Shown: in pieces, positions 1,234 to 6,664 of the stretch | Layout of the letters: every line of letters starts with the position of its first letter | Position numbering within the stretch: position 1 is the stretch's first letter | DNA from: Salpingoeca rosetta | Taxonomy: Eukaryota > Protista > Choanoflagellata | DNA: 12,287 nucleotides | Assembly (NCBI GenBank): GCA_033442325.1 | Contig: JAWQFM010000009.1 | Coordinates: 850,438 to 862,724 of the forward strand | Direction: 5' to 3' | Program-made: the position numbers and the translations under genes | Notes under the pieces: model-generated | Told to the model about the DNA's origin: nothing | What the model saw: the letters and a program-made list of their open reading frames with translations, nothing else | Database searches by the model: none

Positions 1234-1850
1234 NNNNNNNNNNNNNNNNNNNNNNNNNNNNNNNNNNNNNNNNNNNNNNNNNNNNNNNNNNNNNNNNNNN
1301 NNNNNNNNNNNNNNNNNNNNNNNNNNNNNNNNNNNNNNNNNNNNNNNNNNNNNNNNNNNNNNNNNNNNNNNNNNNNNNNNNNNNNNNNNNNNNNNNNNNN
1401 NNNNNNNNNNNNNNNNNNNNNNNNNNNNNNNNNNNNNNNNNNNNNNNNNNNNNNNNNNNNNNNNNNNNNNNNNNNNNNNNNNNNNNNNNNNNNNNNNNNN
1501 NNNNNNNNNNNNNNNNNNNNNNNNNNNNNNNNNNNNNNNNNNNNNNNNNNNNNNNNNNNNNNNNNNNNNNNNNNNNNNNNNNNNNNNNNNNNNNNNNNNN
1601 NNNNNNNNNNNNNNNNNNNNNNNNNNNNNNNNNNNNNNNNNNNNNNNNNNNNNNNNNNNNNNNNNNNNNNNNNNNNNNNNNNNNNNNNNNNNNNNNNNNN
1701 NNNNNNNNNNNNNNNNNNNNNNNNNNNNNNNNNNNNNNNNNNNNNNNNNNNNNNNNNNNNNNNNNNNNNNNNNNNNNNNNNNNNNNNNNNNNNNNNNNNN
1801 NNNNNNNNNNNNNNNNNNNNNNNNNNNNNNNNNNNNNNNNNNNNNNNNNN
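1234..1850. other. Assembly gap (617 N)
   Basis: Run of N in the sequence. Confidence 1.
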
Positions 1851-2439: not shown

Positions 2440-2994
2440 GTGTCTGGCCACCAGCAGCGGCTGGAGGATGCGCTGGCGCGGCTGCGGCACGACAACGCGT
2501 TTGCGCGGGCGACTGCGCGGGAGGCGACGGAGAACGTGGCGCGGCTGCGGGCGGAACTGCGCGCCATCAGCGCCGCCACCACCCGCGCCGCCACGGGAAG
2601 CGCTCGTGGGCGCGCGGACACGCACACGCGCGTCGAGGGAAGCAGTGGATGCAATAGACACAGCAACAGTAGTGGCGGCAACAAAGACAGCAACGGCAAC
2701 TACGGCAACAGTTACGGCAGTGTAGAGGAGGATGCTGGTGGCTCTTCTGGTCAGGGCACGAAGCGGGGCAGGCCAGCCGTGGCGGCGACAGCGAGCAGCG
2801 CGTTTGACGTTGATGCATCGTCGCTATCGTTTGCGCTGGTGGACGAAGGGCGGGCGGAGATGGCGCGGCGGCAGGCTGCGATTGGCAATCTGCACGCGGC
2901 GTTGCATGCAAGCACGACCGCCATCACCAAGATCAAGGCGCAGCTGGACCGCGTCGTCGCCCGCACAGCAGGCGCAATCGCATCCGCCACTTGA
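2440..2994 (+). CDS. Coiled-coil protein, terminal exon D: VSGHQQRLEDALARLRHDN...AGAIASAT*
   Basis: Acceptor cggcag| at 2434-2439, phase 0 in frame with exon C. Coiled coil, then an S/G/N low-complexity linker, then a C-terminal helix. TGA at 2992-2994. Confidence 0.8.
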   Translation: MSGHQQRLEDALARLRHDNAFARATAREATENVARLRAELRAISAATTRAATGSARGRADTHTRVEGSSGCNRHSNSSGGNKDSNGNYGNSYGSVEEDAGGSSGQGTKRGRPAVAATASSAFDVDASSLSFALVDEGRAEMARRQAAIGNLHAALHASTTAITKIKAQLDRVVARTAGAIASAT

Positions 2995-3010
2995 CTGACC
3001 CTTTCCTGCG

Positions 3011-3013
<3 letters not shown>

Positions 3014-3080
<67 letters not shown>
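3014..3080 (+). repeat. (GT)n microsatellite just after the stop of the coiled-coil gene
   Basis: Read directly. Confidence 0.95.
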
Positions 3081-3083
<3 letters not shown>

Positions 3084-3255
3084 TTTGTTTGTGCACCCTG
3101 CTGTTCGTTTGGCTCCTGCTGTTTTGTTACAATGTCACAAACAATTGACGTCTCCATCTATCATCCTTTGTGCGCTCAAGCAGTCTTTCAGCTGCCTCAA
3201 CGCTTAGTCTTTTGAGCATAATGTGATTGCATGACTGGCATAGGGTTCGATTGCT

Positions 3256-3261
3256 TTTATT
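3256..3261 (-). promoter_or_regulatory. Candidate polyadenylation signal AATAAA for the microprotein transcript
   Basis: tttatt on + at 3256-3261 in a locally AT-richer patch about 310 nt downstream of the TAA. Confidence 0.35.
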
Positions 3262-3568
3262 TCCTTGGCGACTGCCTCATAAACGAGCACAGATGCTTTG
3301 ATGAATGAAAGAAGGCGCCGACAAGCAAGGACGGAGGGGGATATCATCGTTTCAGGAAGAGGATGTGCTCATGACGTGTACATCACGGTCATTCGAGTGA
3401 GCAGGACAAGGTACCCGACAAGACAACGCGTGCGAAACAAAGGCGTGGGGATACATTAGGACGAATGGCAGGCACCGATCGAGGGCACTCGCGAGCAAGT
3501 CCAGGAGACGAGGGATCGTTCTGGCGGGCCAGCGGTAGTCATCACGGTAGTGCTTGCTTTGTGCTTGC

Positions 3569-3706
3569 TTATTGCTTGGCGGCCTTGAGACGCATGGCCA
3601 TCTCGCGGTCTGCCTGTGTCTGCTTGCCGGCAGTCCTTGTGTAGACGAAGAAGATGGTGGCGGCGAGGGCAGCCTGGGCAGCGACACCCTTCATGTTACC
3701 GAACAT
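3569..3706 (-). CDS. Putative 45-aa microprotein MFGNMKGVAAQAALAATIFFVYTRTAGKQTQADREMAMRLKAAKQ (one hydrophobic segment plus basic tail)
   Basis: ATG at 3706-3704 in a caacaATG context, TAA at 3571-3569. Strongly biased codons: all Lys AAG, Phe TTC, Leu CTC, Val GTC, Ile ATC, Tyr TAC, Asn AAC, and 8 of 11 Ala GCC. Downstream AATAAA at 3261-3256. Confidence 0.6.
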   Translation of the reverse strand: MFGNMKGVAAQAALAATIFFVYTRTAGKQTQADREMAMRLKAAKQ

Positions 3707-3830
3707 TGTTGCTGTGCTGTTGTTGTTGTGGTCGACGACAAAGGGGCTTTGGCAGACTGTGTGGGCTTCTGCTTGCGAGGATGGAGGATGGAGGTTGGCT
3801 TGGCTTGGCTTGCTTGCTTAGCTTCTGGCT

Positions 3831-3880
3831 TGCTTGGTTGCTTGGTTGCTTGGTTGCTTGGTTGCTTGGTTGCTTGGTTG
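3831..3880. repeat. 8-bp tandem repeat (TGCTTGGT) x6.25, preceded by degenerate TTGGC/TTGC units from about 3795
   Basis: Read directly from the sequence. Confidence 0.95.
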
Positions 3881-4111
3881 ATGATGGTCGGAGAAAAAAT
3901 GAACGCGGCGTACACACGCACATCACACAGCCAAACAACCCCTTGCTGTCTAGCCGCTTCTCGCAAGCACCGCAGGCTGGCACTGTGATGCGAGGACGTT
4001 GTGTTCTTGCTTCAGTGCCCACCATCGCTCAAGCAAGCACCATCGCCCCTTGCATCAAGCTTCTTGGTGTGTGTCAGTGCTGCGCTTGCCTCATGCTCGG
4101 CTTGTAGAAGT

Positions 4112-4117
4112 TTTATT
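4112..4117 (-). promoter_or_regulatory. Candidate polyadenylation signal AATAAA for the TIR-ARM gene
   Basis: tttatt on + at 4112-4117 in an AT-rich patch about 275 nt downstream of the stop at 4391. Confidence 0.4.
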
Positions 4118-4208
4118 GAAAATATCACATAATTATCGTTGTGTCCGGGTTGGCGGCAGCGTTTGTTTGTGTTTGGGGCAGTGGCGGGCAGCAGTGCAGC
4201 AAAGACGG

Positions 4209-4218
4209 ACACACACAC

Positions 4219-4291
<73 letters not shown>

Positions 4292-4386
4292 CACACACAC
4301 ACACACACACACACACAACAACAACAACACACACACACACATACATACGCACACACACAACAACAACACACACACCACAACACACA
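4209..4386 (+). repeat. Compound (CA)n/(CAA)n microsatellite just after the stop of the TIR-ARM gene
   Basis: Read directly. Confidence 0.95.
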
Positions 4387-4390
4387 TGAA

Positions 4391-5339
4391 TCAGTGGTCT
4401 CCTTGTTCTTCCTCGGCCTTGTGCTTGTCATGGTGCAAAGGGAAGGCCAGCGAGAGCGGGCAAGGTAGGACAAGGCGGCGCAGTAGGTTGACTGCGGCTG
4501 GGCGGAGGAGCTGGCGACATGTCGAGGACACTCTCATCGCCTGGCGTTGGCGGACAAGCAGGCTCTGCACGGCATCGCCCAAGTGCATGGACAACATGCG
4601 CACGCGGGCAGCCGCATCAAAGGAGAGGTTGAACAAGGCACGCAGCACAGCCGCCGTAGCGCACGTGTTGTTCTGGTGTCGGACAAACGCACCCAGCAGT
4701 GCTTGGACGCCACCTTTCGTCGCCACGTGCCTGCGGATGACGTGGCTGCTGCATGTGAGCTGCTCGATGAACACGGCCACTGCAGTCACGAGGCCGCCGT
4801 CGTCATCCAGGCTGTCGTGTGTGCTCAGTGCGCTCAGTGCCAACTCGATGCCGTTCCGGCGCACAATCGAGTGGCGTGCGCCTCCCACCGCAGCCAGCGC
4901 TGCCATGCCCTCGAGTGCGTGTGTTTGCACAGCCATGTCGCCCGGGTGCGCTTGCATTGCTGTGCAGAGCGCCGCAATTGCACCCCCGTCGATCAGCTCG
5001 CGGTACCCGCATGAGGACGACGGCCCTTGCATCTGCATGTCGCACCCACACTCATGTTCGCCAATTAGTGGCACGGCAGCACGTGCGTGTGCCGATGTGT
5101 CCGAAGCGGCGCTTCCGCCGCCATGTGCAACCTGTTGGTGGTTCGCTGCAAGCTCGTTGATGGCGCTCTGGAAGCTAGCGTGTGCGGCCGTGGCCCGTCG
5201 GGTGGCACTCAGCACCAGGTCGCACCCACGGCGCTGGATATGCACGTCGGATGAGCGCTCGGCCATGGCGCGCAGCACTGTTCTGATTGGCATGCCATCA
5301 TGCAGCTGTGATGCCAATGAAGGGCACTCGGGAAACCGC

Positions 5340-5375
<36 letters not shown>

Positions 5376-6664
5376 GTGGGTGATGTGTCCAGCCGATCAC
5401 CACCAGACAAGCACGATTGCGCCAGTGATGGTGGTATGGTCGCTGGCGATGGCGATGGGGACGACGGTGCTGACAGCAGTGGTGACGATGAAGCGTGGGT
5501 GATGCTGGAGGTGCAGAGCCCGTTCAGGCGCTGCTTTCGCAGACCGTGCGTCCTGGGAAGATGGCTGGTATTGTTCGTGCCAAGACTGCTTGTGCTGCTG
5601 GTGTTGCTGATGCTGCTGGTGTGAATGCTGATTCCTGCAAACGTGCCAGTCGTGGACGTGTTTGTGCGGCGTGGCTTGCTGTTCGGCGGAGGGACAGAGG
5701 GGAACAGCCTCGCTGCCTGTGGCTTTGGCAGCTGTGGGCGGCGCGGTTCGGGCGGAGCAGTCGTAACTGGGGGTTGCTTTGCCGTTGTGGTTGCCGGCGC
5801 TGTTGGCGTCATGCGTGTCGCCATGCCCGTGTTGAGACTGTTGGGAGCGAGGCTGCGTACTCGGCGAAGGCCTTGGTGCTCATGTGGGAAGCGTGTGTCC
5901 TCAGACCGCGTGTGGATACGTGGCAGCGTGCCCGTGCTCTGCGCTGCTGGTGAGAGGGTGCGGGGCCGCTGGCGCATGCCCCTCGGATCGCTGACGGTGC
6001 GGCGCGGCGAACGGTGGCCCAGACTTGGCGACCGACTGCTGCGGTGGGAAACAAGCGACGTATCCTTGCCCAGCACGTGCATGAGGGCCAGGATGAGCTT
6101 TTGCGGTGGCCTGTCGCTGCACTCGGCCGTACCCATGTGCCAGTGCACCGTTGCTATCGCCTCGAGCCCGGCAGGAAGGCGGATGCTGCTGCTGCTGCTT
6201 GATGGTGCGACATTGCTGCCTGGCTGCGAGGGAGGGCGTGAGCGACGGCGCTGCACCGGGCTCGCCATGGCCGTCCACAAGTTGACAACGATGCACGGCT
6301 TCTTTGTAGTGATGATGGAGCGAAGGACGGCTGCGGTGCTGTGGCTGTTCCACATGTGTGCCCTCCCTGCACGTGAGGATGCCGCATTGTTGTCTGGACC
6401 CACGGGCTCGTGTATGTCCAGGATGATGATTGCTCTTGCCATCTGTATGAGCTCCAGTAACGCGATGTCTGCCTCATGGGTGGTGGATGAGCCGTGGTGG
6501 TGCTTGCTGAAGAGCGCGCTGGAAGGGAGGCGCACAGACGCGACGTCGTGCATCTCCAGCCATGCCTTGAGCTTGCCTGCAGGCACGATGGCTTGTCGTG
6601 ACCAGTAGATAATGGAGATAACCGGCGTGGCAGCTCGGTCTTGGATCTGCACCTGAGCACACAT
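4391..6664 (-). CDS. 757-aa protein: N-terminal TIR-like domain (about 6625-6068), S/T/P/R-rich disordered linker with polyQ, C-terminal armadillo repeats (about 5293-4505)
   Basis: Long uninterrupted ORF. ARM-type repeats: IRTVLRAMAERSSDVHIQRRGC, GGAIAALCTAMQAHPGDMAVQTHALEGMAALA, NGIELALSALSTH, GGVQALLGAFVRHQNNTCATAAVLRALFNLS. TIR-like elements appear in the expected order (VISIIYW...LIQMARAIIILD...TTKKPCIVVNL...LPAGLEAIATVHW). The true 5' end is uncertain. Confidence 0.85.
5342..5371 (-). repeat. Coding (CAG)10 encoding polyQ
   Basis: (CTG)10 on +, translated as Q10 in the 757-aa ORF. Confidence 0.95.

What the first reader, a model, noticed from the sequence alone, without database searches (positions are those of the whole stretch)
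3569..3706. Hidden 45-aa microprotein gene with a highly-expressed-type codon signature
Seen: minus-strand ATG-to-TAA ORF MFGNMKGVAAQAALAATIFFVYTRTAGKQTQADREMAMRLKAAKQ, too short for the ORF track. Codons are strikingly uniform (Lys 4/4 AAG, Phe 3/3 TTC, Leu CTC, Val GTC, Ala 8/11 GCC, Gly GGT/GGC). It has no GCG, CTG, GTG or CGG, which dominate the neighbouring coiled-coil gene. It has a CAA-rich leader ending caacaATG and lies between two minus-strand AATAAA sites (4117-4112 upstream, 3261-3256 downstream), so it looks like its own transcription unit. The peptide has a 15-aa hydrophobic stretch (VAAQAALAATIFFVY) and a basic helical tail. Inference: either a small single-pass membrane subunit (for example a mitochondrial respiratory-chain or ATP synthase accessory subunit) or a signal-peptide precursor releasing an ~18-aa peptide. 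I cannot assign a family.
Basis: partly seen in the sequence, partly recalled or inferred. Interest (0 to 1): 0.75.

Follow-up and report, generated by a model that had tools for sequence, protein, structure and literature searches.

The report
Unannotated conserved membrane microprotein gene
A 45-codon reading frame that gene finders skipped is almost certainly a real, probably strongly expressed gene for a tiny one-helix membrane protein, kept by at least one other marine protist; which membrane machine it belongs to is still unknown.

Summary
The ORF (window 3569-3706, minus strand, 45 aa) is as described, and every codon count holds. Its codon adaptation index, weighted on EF1A, EF2, actin, RPL3, tubulins and HSP70 of this genome, is 0.51. 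Neighbouring genes score 0.16-0.22. Of 675 random ATG-ORFs of 35-70 codons (mean 0.154), only two reach it, and both are real exons (HSP70, RPL31e).

One homologue exists: a 49-aa ORF on marine metagenome contigs (58% identity, 78% in the core). It sits in conserved synteny, with aligned start and stop codons and unalignable flanks. In the core, 18 nucleotide changes leave 18/23 residues identical (0/20000 permutations).

AlphaFold2 predicts helix 5-25, a hinge and helix 31-44. The variable residues of the first helix lie on one face (P=0.013).

No Pfam, PDB-chain, Foldseek or language-model match was found. Canonical OST4, DAPIT/k and subunit e lie elsewhere in the genome, and published SMIM20 is a three-exon gene.

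Best reading: an orphan single-pass membrane microprotein that packs into an abundant complex. A mitochondrial location is inferred, not shown. The signal-peptide reading is disfavoured because the hydrophobic helix, not the tail, is conserved. Transcription could not be tested. Moderate interest.

The parts
3569..3706 (-). Complete single-exon CDS of the 45-aa microprotein (ATG 3706-3704, TAA 3571-3569)
   Evidence: The orthologue's start and stop codons align with it. There are no consensus splice donors inside, and the upstream frame is not conserved and is closed by a stop at -114 nt. CAI 0.51.
3632..3694 (-). Codons 5-25: predicted transmembrane helix (Ala-rich, MKGVAAQAALAATIFFVYTRT)
   Evidence: AlphaFold2 helix 5-25, block pLDDT up to 88. 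KD 17-aa window 1.56. 15 of 21 positions are identical in the orthologue, and the variable ones cluster on one helical face, P=0.013.
3623..3637 (-). Codons 24-28: invariant RTAGK juxtamembrane hinge
   Evidence: Identical in both species. Non-helical at residues 26-30 in the model.
3575..3616 (-). Codons 31-44: second, basic helix (tail), weakly conserved
   Evidence: AF2 helix 31-44. In the tail, codons 29-44, 4/16 residues are identical, but the BLOSUM score is above shuffles, P=0.01. Not significantly amphipathic.
3707..3904 (-). Inferred 5' UTR (about 195 nt), G-poor and C/A-rich, with a (CAACCAAG)n array at 3793-3880
   Evidence: Its composition and the caacaATG context resemble the EF1A (caacATG) and actin leaders. 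The extent is an inference.
3897..3904 (-). GTTCATTT initiator-like motif, candidate transcription start
   Evidence: Background is 0.002 per 400 nt. The motif is found 100-220 nt upstream of the ATG of an actin, an alpha-tubulin-like gene, two HSP70 genes and this sORF. The TTCATTTW form occurs twice upstream of the orthologue. The motif was partly defined after seeing the data, and its function is an inference.
3262..3568 (-). Inferred 3' UTR
   Evidence: No alignable similarity to the orthologous contig. It ends at the AATAAA.
3256..3261 (-). AATAAA poly(A) signal of the sORF unit
   Evidence: 307 nt after the stop. The orthologue has one 224 nt after its stop.
4112..4117 (-). AATAAA poly(A) signal that probably ends the upstream ARM-repeat gene (ORF 4391-6664, minus strand), separating it from the sORF unit
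   Evidence: 273 nt after that gene's stop.

Best explanation
The ORF is a real, free-standing, single-exon gene. By codon usage it is strongly expressed. It encodes a 45-residue single-pass membrane protein with three parts: a 4-7 residue N-terminal stub, an alanine-rich transmembrane helix (about residues 5-25), and an invariant Tyr/Arg/Lys-bearing hinge (VY-x-RTAGK) at the membrane interface followed by a short basic helix. Most of the transmembrane helix surface is conserved and only one face varies. The protein therefore most likely works as a tightly packed accessory (supernumerary) subunit or assembly factor of an abundant membrane complex, not as a free peptide. The most likely home is the mitochondrial inner membrane (an oxidative-phosphorylation complex). 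That rests on three inferences: such complexes hold many proteins of this format, the helix is only moderately hydrophobic, and the ATP-synthase j/6.8PL-type position has no detectable occupant in this genome. Shown here: the ORF, its conservation, protein-level constraint, codon bias, the predicted helices and the absence of paralogues. Inferred: transcription from its own start, membrane insertion, partnership in a complex and the organelle.
For: 1. Homologue. A full HMMER scan of 1.84 billion proteins gave one true hit, P0003, 49 aa: 22/38 identical.
2. Synteny. P0003 lies on marine metagenome contigs from six samples. The only collinear DNA similarity to the window is the sORF plus two blocks of the convergent coiled-coil gene, and the flanks do not align. 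The neighbouring protein is only 33% identical, so the sORF is the better conserved of the two.
3. Protein-level constraint. In core codons 6-28 there are 18 nt differences, 7 codons changed synonymously only, and 18/23 residues are identical. 0 of 20000 random placements of the differences reach this. Frame 0 has the highest identity and is one of three frames without a stop in either species.
4. Codon bias. CAI 0.51 (orthologue 0.40) against 0.16-0.22 for the neighbours. It falls within the top 2 of 675 null ORFs, and both ORFs above it are real exons.
5. Structure. Helix 5-25, hinge, helix 31-44, pLDDT 74. Net charge is +1 on the N side and +4 on the C side. Variable positions lie on one face, P=0.013.
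6. Own transcription unit. The leader and start context resemble EF1A and actin. A rare GTTCATTT motif is shared with highly expressed genes. Poly(A) signals lie on both sides.
7. Single copy. There is no paralogue, so it is not a pseudogene fragment.
8. Weak lead to mitochondria. Most of the nearest named language-model clusters are small single-helix mitochondrial proteins (COX6C, MITRAC7, the NDUFB1-type family), at scores of 0.77-0.83 only. PF08039 and PF04911 find no significant match in the genome, while e and DAPIT/k are found elsewhere.
Against: - No transcript, ribosome-footprint or peptide evidence could be obtained. The exact-sequence look-up found no record.
- Only one homologous species is known, so the statistics rest on a single pair.
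- Whole-length dN/dS is an unimpressive 0.61, and differences are not enriched at third codon positions (16/11/16). Third positions are constrained by shared codon bias, and the tail is diverging.
- The helix is short and only moderately hydrophobic (KD 1.56 over 17 residues), so membrane insertion is not certain.
- No family, PDB chain or fold match was found.
- The language-model scores are in the range that shuffled sequences reach a third of the time.
- The population comparison of the six metagenome contigs shows no variant in the ORF, but that is not significant (about 2 expected).
Confidence: 0.6

Rival explanations
1. Same real gene and same single-pass architecture, but the protein sits in the ER, Golgi or plasma membrane as a small subunit or regulator there (format of OST4, SERCA-regulator or translocon-accessory proteins) and not in mitochondria.
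For: An N-terminal helix followed by a positively charged C-side (+4 against +1) fits an N-out/C-cytosolic signal anchor. There is no presequence. The evidence for mitochondria is only a weak language-model lead.
Against: Canonical OST4 is encoded elsewhere. The alanine-rich, moderately hydrophobic helix is less typical of ER signal anchors; that point is established knowledge, not tested here. No profile match to any ER small-subunit family.
Confidence: 0.22
2. It is a secretory precursor. Residues 1-27 are a signal peptide cleaved after the conserved T-A-G, releasing an 18-20 residue basic peptide.
For: It has an n-h-c layout (K6, a hydrophobic stretch, then small residues at -3/-1 in RTAG|K). 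RTAGK is invariant. The published debate over SMIM20/phoenixin shows such N-terminal helices can be read either way (PMC9004410).
Against: The conservation pattern is inverted: the hydrophobic helix is 15/21 identical, while the putative mature peptide is 4/16 identical and differs in length. The variable helix positions lie on one face, as in packed membrane helices. There are no dibasic sites or amidation motifs in the tail (sequence). No signal-peptide predictor was available.
Confidence: 0.08
3. It is not a protein-coding gene: either a conserved RNA or DNA element, or a chance ORF inside a long 3' UTR of the upstream ARM-repeat gene.
For: No expression data. Whole-length dN/dS is 0.61, and other frames of the same island score 0.68-0.89. 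Only one relative is known.
Against: Start and stop codons are aligned in both species, and the indels are in multiples of three. Seven codons changed synonymously only, with a permutation P below 5e-5. CAI is matched only by true exons of highly expressed genes. No Rfam family covers it. A poly(A) signal lies between it and the ARM gene.
Confidence: 0.06
4. It is one exon of a larger spliced gene.
For: Genes in this genome are intron-rich. The frame stays open 37 codons upstream of the ATG.
Against: The upstream frame is unrelated between the two species and closed by stops at -114 and -147 nt. No GTRAGT-type donor is present in either ORF. The TAA and its context CAATAAGCA are conserved. Nothing else in the interval aligns.
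Confidence: 0.04

Closest known systems
Supernumerary single-helix subunits of mitochondrial ATP synthase (6.8PL/ATP5MJ, fungal j, DAPIT/k, e)
   Same: Size class (45-70 aa), one predicted transmembrane helix, a basic tail and high expression. These subunits diverge so fast that the animal subunits DAPIT and 6.8PL and the fungal subunits j, k and l were reported as not conserved between the two (PMC4422255). From memory only, and untested: 6.8PL also has a ...VY... then R-S/T-A-x-K stretch straight after its helix.
   Different: No profile match to PF08039, PF04911, PF05680 or PF14960, and none to any ATP-synthase chain in the PDB. It lacks the roughly 25-residue N-terminal part of 6.8PL. Subunits e and DAPIT/k are encoded elsewhere in this genome. 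Only the j/6.8PL position is unfilled.
SMIM20 / MITRAC7 / phoenixin precursor
   Same: A short protein with an N-terminal hydrophobic helix that can be read as signal peptide or membrane anchor. It is among the nearest named language-model clusters (0.82).
   Different: No match to the PF15061 profile. The published S. rosetta phoenixin gene has three exons with two phase-1 introns and conserved dibasic sites (PMC9004410). This gene is a single exon with no dibasic sites.
Small single-helix OXPHOS subunits such as COX6C and NDUFB1 (MNLL)
   Same: One helix followed by a charged tail. These are the nearest named language-model clusters (0.81-0.83).
   Different: The scores are at noise level for that tool. 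No Pfam hit and no PDB-chain hit at E<=10. This protein is shorter.
OST4 (oligosaccharyltransferase subunit 4)
   Same: About 37-45 aa, an N-terminal helix, an aromatic residue at the helix end, and routinely missed by annotation.
   Different: No PF10215 match. A canonical 37-aa OST4 (51 bits) is encoded at C12:824399-824500 of this genome.
Mitoregulin, STMP1, UQCC5/UQCC6 mitochondrial microproteins
   Same: The same kind of hidden single-helix microprotein. Earlier notes of this scan report such genes elsewhere in this genome (unchecked).
   Different: Those positions are reported as filled by other loci. No sequence relation to this ORF was detected.

Membership tests
Conserved single-pass membrane microprotein (generic kind) | Complete short ORF conserved as an ORF in another species under protein-level constraint | tested here: met
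Conserved single-pass membrane microprotein (generic kind) | One predicted transmembrane helix | tested here: met
   AF2 helix 5-25. KD 1.56 over 17 aa, which is moderate. No dedicated topology predictor was available.
Conserved single-pass membrane microprotein (generic kind) | Transcribed and translated | not testable with these tools
   Only indirect evidence: CAI 0.51, a promoter-like motif and poly(A) signals.
ATP synthase 6.8 kDa proteolipid (PF08039) / fungal subunit j (PF04911) | Match to the family profile or to solved chains | tested here: not met
   0 Pfam families at E<=10. 0 PDB chains at E<=10 with the two-sequence profile.
ATP synthase 6.8 kDa proteolipid (PF08039) / fungal subunit j (PF04911) | No other gene of the genome fills the position | tested here: inconclusive
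   PF08039 gives no hit. PF04911 gives only E=2.7, with a stop inside the match. Short, intron-split genes can escape a six-frame search.
ATP synthase 6.8 kDa proteolipid (PF08039) / fungal subunit j (PF04911) | Physical presence in purified ATP synthase | not testable with these tools
   Needs complexome profiling or purification.
ATP synthase subunit e (PF05680) and DAPIT/k (PF14960) | Profile match; position not filled elsewhere | tested here: not met
   No match. Other loci match: C1:2445816 at 23.3 bits and C1:2540568 at 38.2 bits.
OST4 (PF10215) | Profile match; position not filled elsewhere | tested here: not met
   No match. Canonical OST4 at C12:824399-824500, 51 bits.
SMIM20/MITRAC7/phoenixin (PF15061) | Profile match; three-exon structure with two phase-1 introns; dibasic cleavage sites | tested here: not met
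   No match. Single exon. No dibasic site. The family's features are taken from PMC9004410.
Secreted peptide precursor | Cleavable signal peptide, with the mature peptide the conserved part | tested here: not met
   An n-h-c layout is possible, but conservation is concentrated in the helix and hinge, not the tail. Cleavage itself is not testable here.

The most novel reading that the evidence does not exclude
The microprotein is a supernumerary subunit specific to the choanoflagellate lineage, or diverged beyond recognition, of a mitochondrial OXPHOS complex. Specifically, it may occupy the j/6.8PL position of the ATP-synthase dimer interface, for which this genome shows no detectable gene. 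If so, that position is filled by fast-evolving proteins that may or may not share ancestry across opisthokonts.
Probability: 0.13. Interest if true: 0.55.

Novelty: new member of a known kind. Interest (0 to 1): 0.4.

Why it matters
If the earlier notes of this scan are right that this genome is Salpingoeca rosetta, the main laboratory model for animal origins, then its gene catalogue lacks a conserved and apparently abundant membrane protein. Small single-helix proteins are regular, functionally important parts of respiratory complexes, translocons and pumps, and they are systematically missed by annotation. Adding this one lets it be found in proteomics searches and complexome profiles of choanoflagellates. 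It also gives a concrete candidate for a small-subunit position that has no detectable gene here. More generally, the case shows that codon adaptation plus a single syntenic metagenome contig can validate a 45-codon gene without expression data.

Tried and rejected
- Pfam scan of the peptide at E<=10: nothing.
- Word-indexed protein search with the peptide, and with the two-sequence profile: only P0003.
- Exact-sequence look-up of the peptide: not on record. The same for the upstream ARM protein, which I tried in order to name the organism: not on record.
- PDB sequence search with the profile at E<=10: nothing.
- Foldseek of the AF2 model against the PDB: nothing. A helix-hinge-helix fold carries little information anyway.
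- ESM Atlas: best score 0.80, unnamed clusters. Named clusters score 0.77-0.83, a lead only.
- JGI metagenomes: the search for related loci found none. A back-translated VY-x-RTAGK-xxx-AD pattern gave 5 hits, all chance matches inside unrelated larger proteins.
- Word search with the orthologue's neighbouring protein, meant to reach more syntenic contigs: nothing scored.
- Paralogue search in the own genome with the peptide and with the profile: only the locus itself.
- Rfam on 2900-4500: only a sub-threshold SCARNA2 hit in the (AC)n tract, taken as spurious.
- Nei-Gojobori dN/dS over the whole ORF: 0.61, not decisive on its own.
- Amphipathicity of the tail helix: not above shuffles, so that description was dropped.
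- Polymorphism among the six metagenome contigs: no variant in the ORF, but only about 2 expected, so not significant. The alignment is also partly disturbed by repeats.
- Not done: a formal profile-profile comparison with the 6.8PL/j, COX6C or NDUFB1 families. No alignment of those families could be obtained by reference, and I did not type sequences from memory.
- The organism name (Salpingoeca rosetta) comes from earlier notes of this scan and was not verified here.

Full report
**1. What is there**

The window lies at C9:850438-862724 of a 55.4-Mb, 68-contig eukaryotic assembly. Earlier notes of this scan call it Salpingoeca rosetta; I did not verify the name.

The ORF sits in a 1.4-kb interval between two genes:
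- the stop of a 757-aa armadillo-repeat ORF (4391-6664, minus strand);
- the stop of a convergent plus-strand coiled-coil gene ending at 2994, whose upstream part is interrupted by an assembly gap of N at 1234-1850.

**2. Is the codon signature more than chance?**

I took reference genes from the same genome by Pfam search: EF2, EF1A, actin, RPL3, two tubulins and HSP70, 3483 codons in all. I built CAI weights from them.

| Sequence | CAI |
|---|---|
| sORF | 0.51 |
| Reference genes, leave-one-out (first, smaller reference set) | 0.74-0.79 (EF2 0.59, contaminated by an intron) |
| ARM gene, 674-aa ORF, coiled-coil exon | 0.22, 0.18, 0.16 |
| 675 ATG-ORFs of 35-70 codons from 20 random 10-kb stretches | mean 0.154, sd 0.067 |
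| 58 ORFs of 250 codons or more in the same sample | max 0.502 |

Only two of the 675 null ORFs reach the sORF. By their sequences, both are real exons: the C-terminus of an HSP70 and ribosomal protein L31e.

**3. Is it conserved?**

The word-indexed search found nothing. The exhaustive HMMER scan of 1.84 billion representatives gave one genuine hit, P0003, 49 aa. It shares 22/38 residues in a gap-free stretch, with K-G-x-x-AQA-x-LAATIF-x-VY-x-RTAGK conserved. Two long low-complexity proteins above it in the list have no aligned stretch.

P0003 is encoded on six short contigs from marine metagenomes, including Tara Oceans samples. Its ORF is identical in all six, while the contigs differ at 1-2% elsewhere.

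The longest contig, L002, is syntenic with the window. A sensitive blastn finds only three collinear islands:
- window 3680-3602 = L002 648-726, the sORF;
- window 2874-2822 = L002 1246-1298, in the convergent coiled-coil gene;
- window 2576-2446 = L002 1595-1725, in the same gene.

Everything else is unalignable or simple repeat. The coiled-coil proteins are only 33% identical, so the two organisms are distant, and the sORF (58% overall, 78% in the core) is the better conserved gene. Start codons align, the stop and its context (CAATAAGCA) align, and both indels are two codons long.

**4. Protein-level constraint**

Whole-length Nei-Gojobori dN/dS is 0.61, and differences are spread 16/11/16 over the three codon positions. 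On its own that is weak.

The signal is clearer when the two halves are separated:
- Core, codons 6-28: 18 nucleotide differences, yet 18/23 residues are identical and 7 codons differ only synonymously. Random placement of the same differences gives 11.9 identical residues on average and never reaches 18 in 20000 trials.
- Tail, codons 29-44: only 4/16 identical, although its BLOSUM score is above shuffled tails (P=0.01).

Frame 0 has the highest amino-acid identity of the six frames and is one of three frames without a stop in either species.

There are no consensus splice donors in either ORF. The upstream in-frame sequence is unrelated between the species and closed by stops. The ATG-TAA frame is therefore the whole coding sequence. 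There is no paralogue in the genome, so it is not a decayed copy of a highly expressed gene. No Rfam family covers it.

**5. Its own transcription unit (inferred)**

- The last 100 nt before the ATG are G-poor and C/A-rich, like the EF1A and actin leaders. The start context caacaATGt resembles EF1A's caacATGt.
- An 8-mer, GTTCATTT, occurs 0.002 times per 400 nt in 200 kb of background. It is found 108-216 nt upstream of the ATG of an actin, a tubulin and two HSP70 genes, and 198 nt upstream of the sORF (3904-3897). The looser TTCATTTW occurs twice upstream of the orthologue. I noticed the motif in a set that included the sORF. The tubulin and HSP70 genes were then an independent check, although the two HSP70 genes are paralogues.
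- AATAAA follows the upstream gene's stop by 273 nt, the sORF stop by 307 nt, and the orthologue's stop by 224 nt.
- No tool here gives RNA evidence, so transcription remains unshown.

**6. What the protein looks like**

AlphaFold2 on the two-sequence alignment gives helix 5-25, a break at 26-30 and helix 31-44 (mean pLDDT 74).

The first helix is alanine-rich and only moderately hydrophobic (Kyte-Doolittle 1.56 over 17 residues). Net charge is +1 before it and +4 after it. Within helix 5-25, the six positions that differ between the species (5, 8, 9, 13, 20, 23) cluster on one helical face. The resultant length is 0.71, with exact P=0.013 over all choices of six positions. A helix conserved on about three-quarters of its surface suggests packing against protein partners, with one lipid-facing side. 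The second helix is not significantly amphipathic.

**7. Family assignment**

Nothing matched:
- no Pfam family even at E<=10;
- no PDB chain with the profile at E<=10, although the PDB holds the small subunits of respiratory complexes, ATP synthases, OST and translocons;
- no Foldseek match;
- nothing in JGI metagenomes.

The language-model atlas gave only noise-level neighbours. Among named clusters, most are small single-helix mitochondrial proteins (COX6C, MITRAC7/phoenixin, the NDUFB1-type family), at 0.77-0.83. The tool itself rates scores in that range as a lead only.

I then checked which obvious positions are already filled in this genome:

| Family | Result in this genome |
|---|---|
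| OST4 (PF10215) | canonical, 51 bits, C12:824399-824500 |
| ATP synthase subunit e (PF05680) | 23.3 bits, on C1 |
| DAPIT/k (PF14960) | 38.2 bits, on C1 |
| 6.8-kDa proteolipid (PF08039) | no hit |
| Fungal subunit j (PF04911) | no significant hit |

The published S. rosetta phoenixin/SMIM20 gene has three exons and dibasic sites (PMC9004410), unlike this one. Earlier notes of this scan report mitoregulin-, STMP1- and UQCC5/6-type genes at other loci (unchecked).

The supernumerary ATP-synthase subunits each have one predicted transmembrane helix. The animal subunits DAPIT and 6.8PL and the fungal subunits j, k and l were reported as not conserved between animals and fungi (PMC4422255). Failure to match by sequence therefore does not exclude that role, but nothing positive supports it beyond format and the empty position. 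A resemblance I recall between the post-helix stretch of 6.8PL and VY-x-RTAGK is from memory and was not tested.

**8. Verdict**

- The ORF is very probably a real, independently expressed, conserved gene for a single-pass membrane microprotein (about 0.85-0.9 that it is a coding gene).
- The pattern of conservation favours a packed subunit or assembly factor of an abundant membrane complex over a signal-peptide precursor.
- A mitochondrial home is the leading guess (about 0.4), ER or another membrane next (about 0.2-0.25), and a secreted peptide unlikely (about 0.08).
- It is a new, so far orphan, member of a well-known kind of gene.
- Interest is moderate. It would rise if the protein were shown to be a missing subunit of an OXPHOS complex.

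Noticed in passing
window 3897-3904 (-); L012, L025, L028, L029 upstream regions: The octamer GTTCATTT (looser form TTCATTTW) is very rare in 200 kb of background (0.002-0.003 per 400 nt). It lies 100-220 nt upstream of the start codons of actin, a tubulin, two HSP70 genes and this sORF. It is a candidate initiator or core-promoter motif of highly expressed genes in this organism.
   Followed up: partly
window 1234-1850: A run of N (assembly gap) interrupts the plus-strand coiled-coil gene next to the sORF. It explains the apparent 22% GC dip in the composition profile, and it means that gene's model cannot be completed from this window.
   Followed up: yes
L052 (G000:C12:824399-824500, minus strand): A canonical 37-aa OST4 gene (51 bits to PF10215), preceded by a long (CA)n tract. 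It is another tiny membrane-protein gene of the kind that annotation tends to skip. I did not check whether it is annotated.
   Followed up: partly
L055 (G000:C1:2445816-2445875) and L056 (G000:C1:2540568-2540693): Exon-level matches to ATP synthase subunit e (23.3 bits) and DAPIT/subunit k (38.2 bits). No match in the genome to the 6.8-kDa proteolipid or fungal subunit j profiles.
   Followed up: partly
window 4209-4386 and 3013-3092: Long (AC)n/(CA)n microsatellites lie in the 3' regions of both neighbouring genes. A sub-threshold Rfam SCARNA2 hit (24 bits against a 48-bit gathering score) at 4061-4344 overlaps the first one and is probably spurious.
   Followed up: partly
L002-L007: The orthologous locus was assembled independently from six marine metagenome samples, with 97.7-99.2% identity between contigs. 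The unnamed relative carrying it is therefore widespread in the ocean. Its taxon was not determined.
   Followed up: partly
L022:4339-4377 (-): A GC-rich metagenome contig encodes ...SGVYLRTAGKTPQADRAKAM... inside a much larger protein. This is a chance look-alike of the conserved hinge, not a relative.
   Followed up: yes
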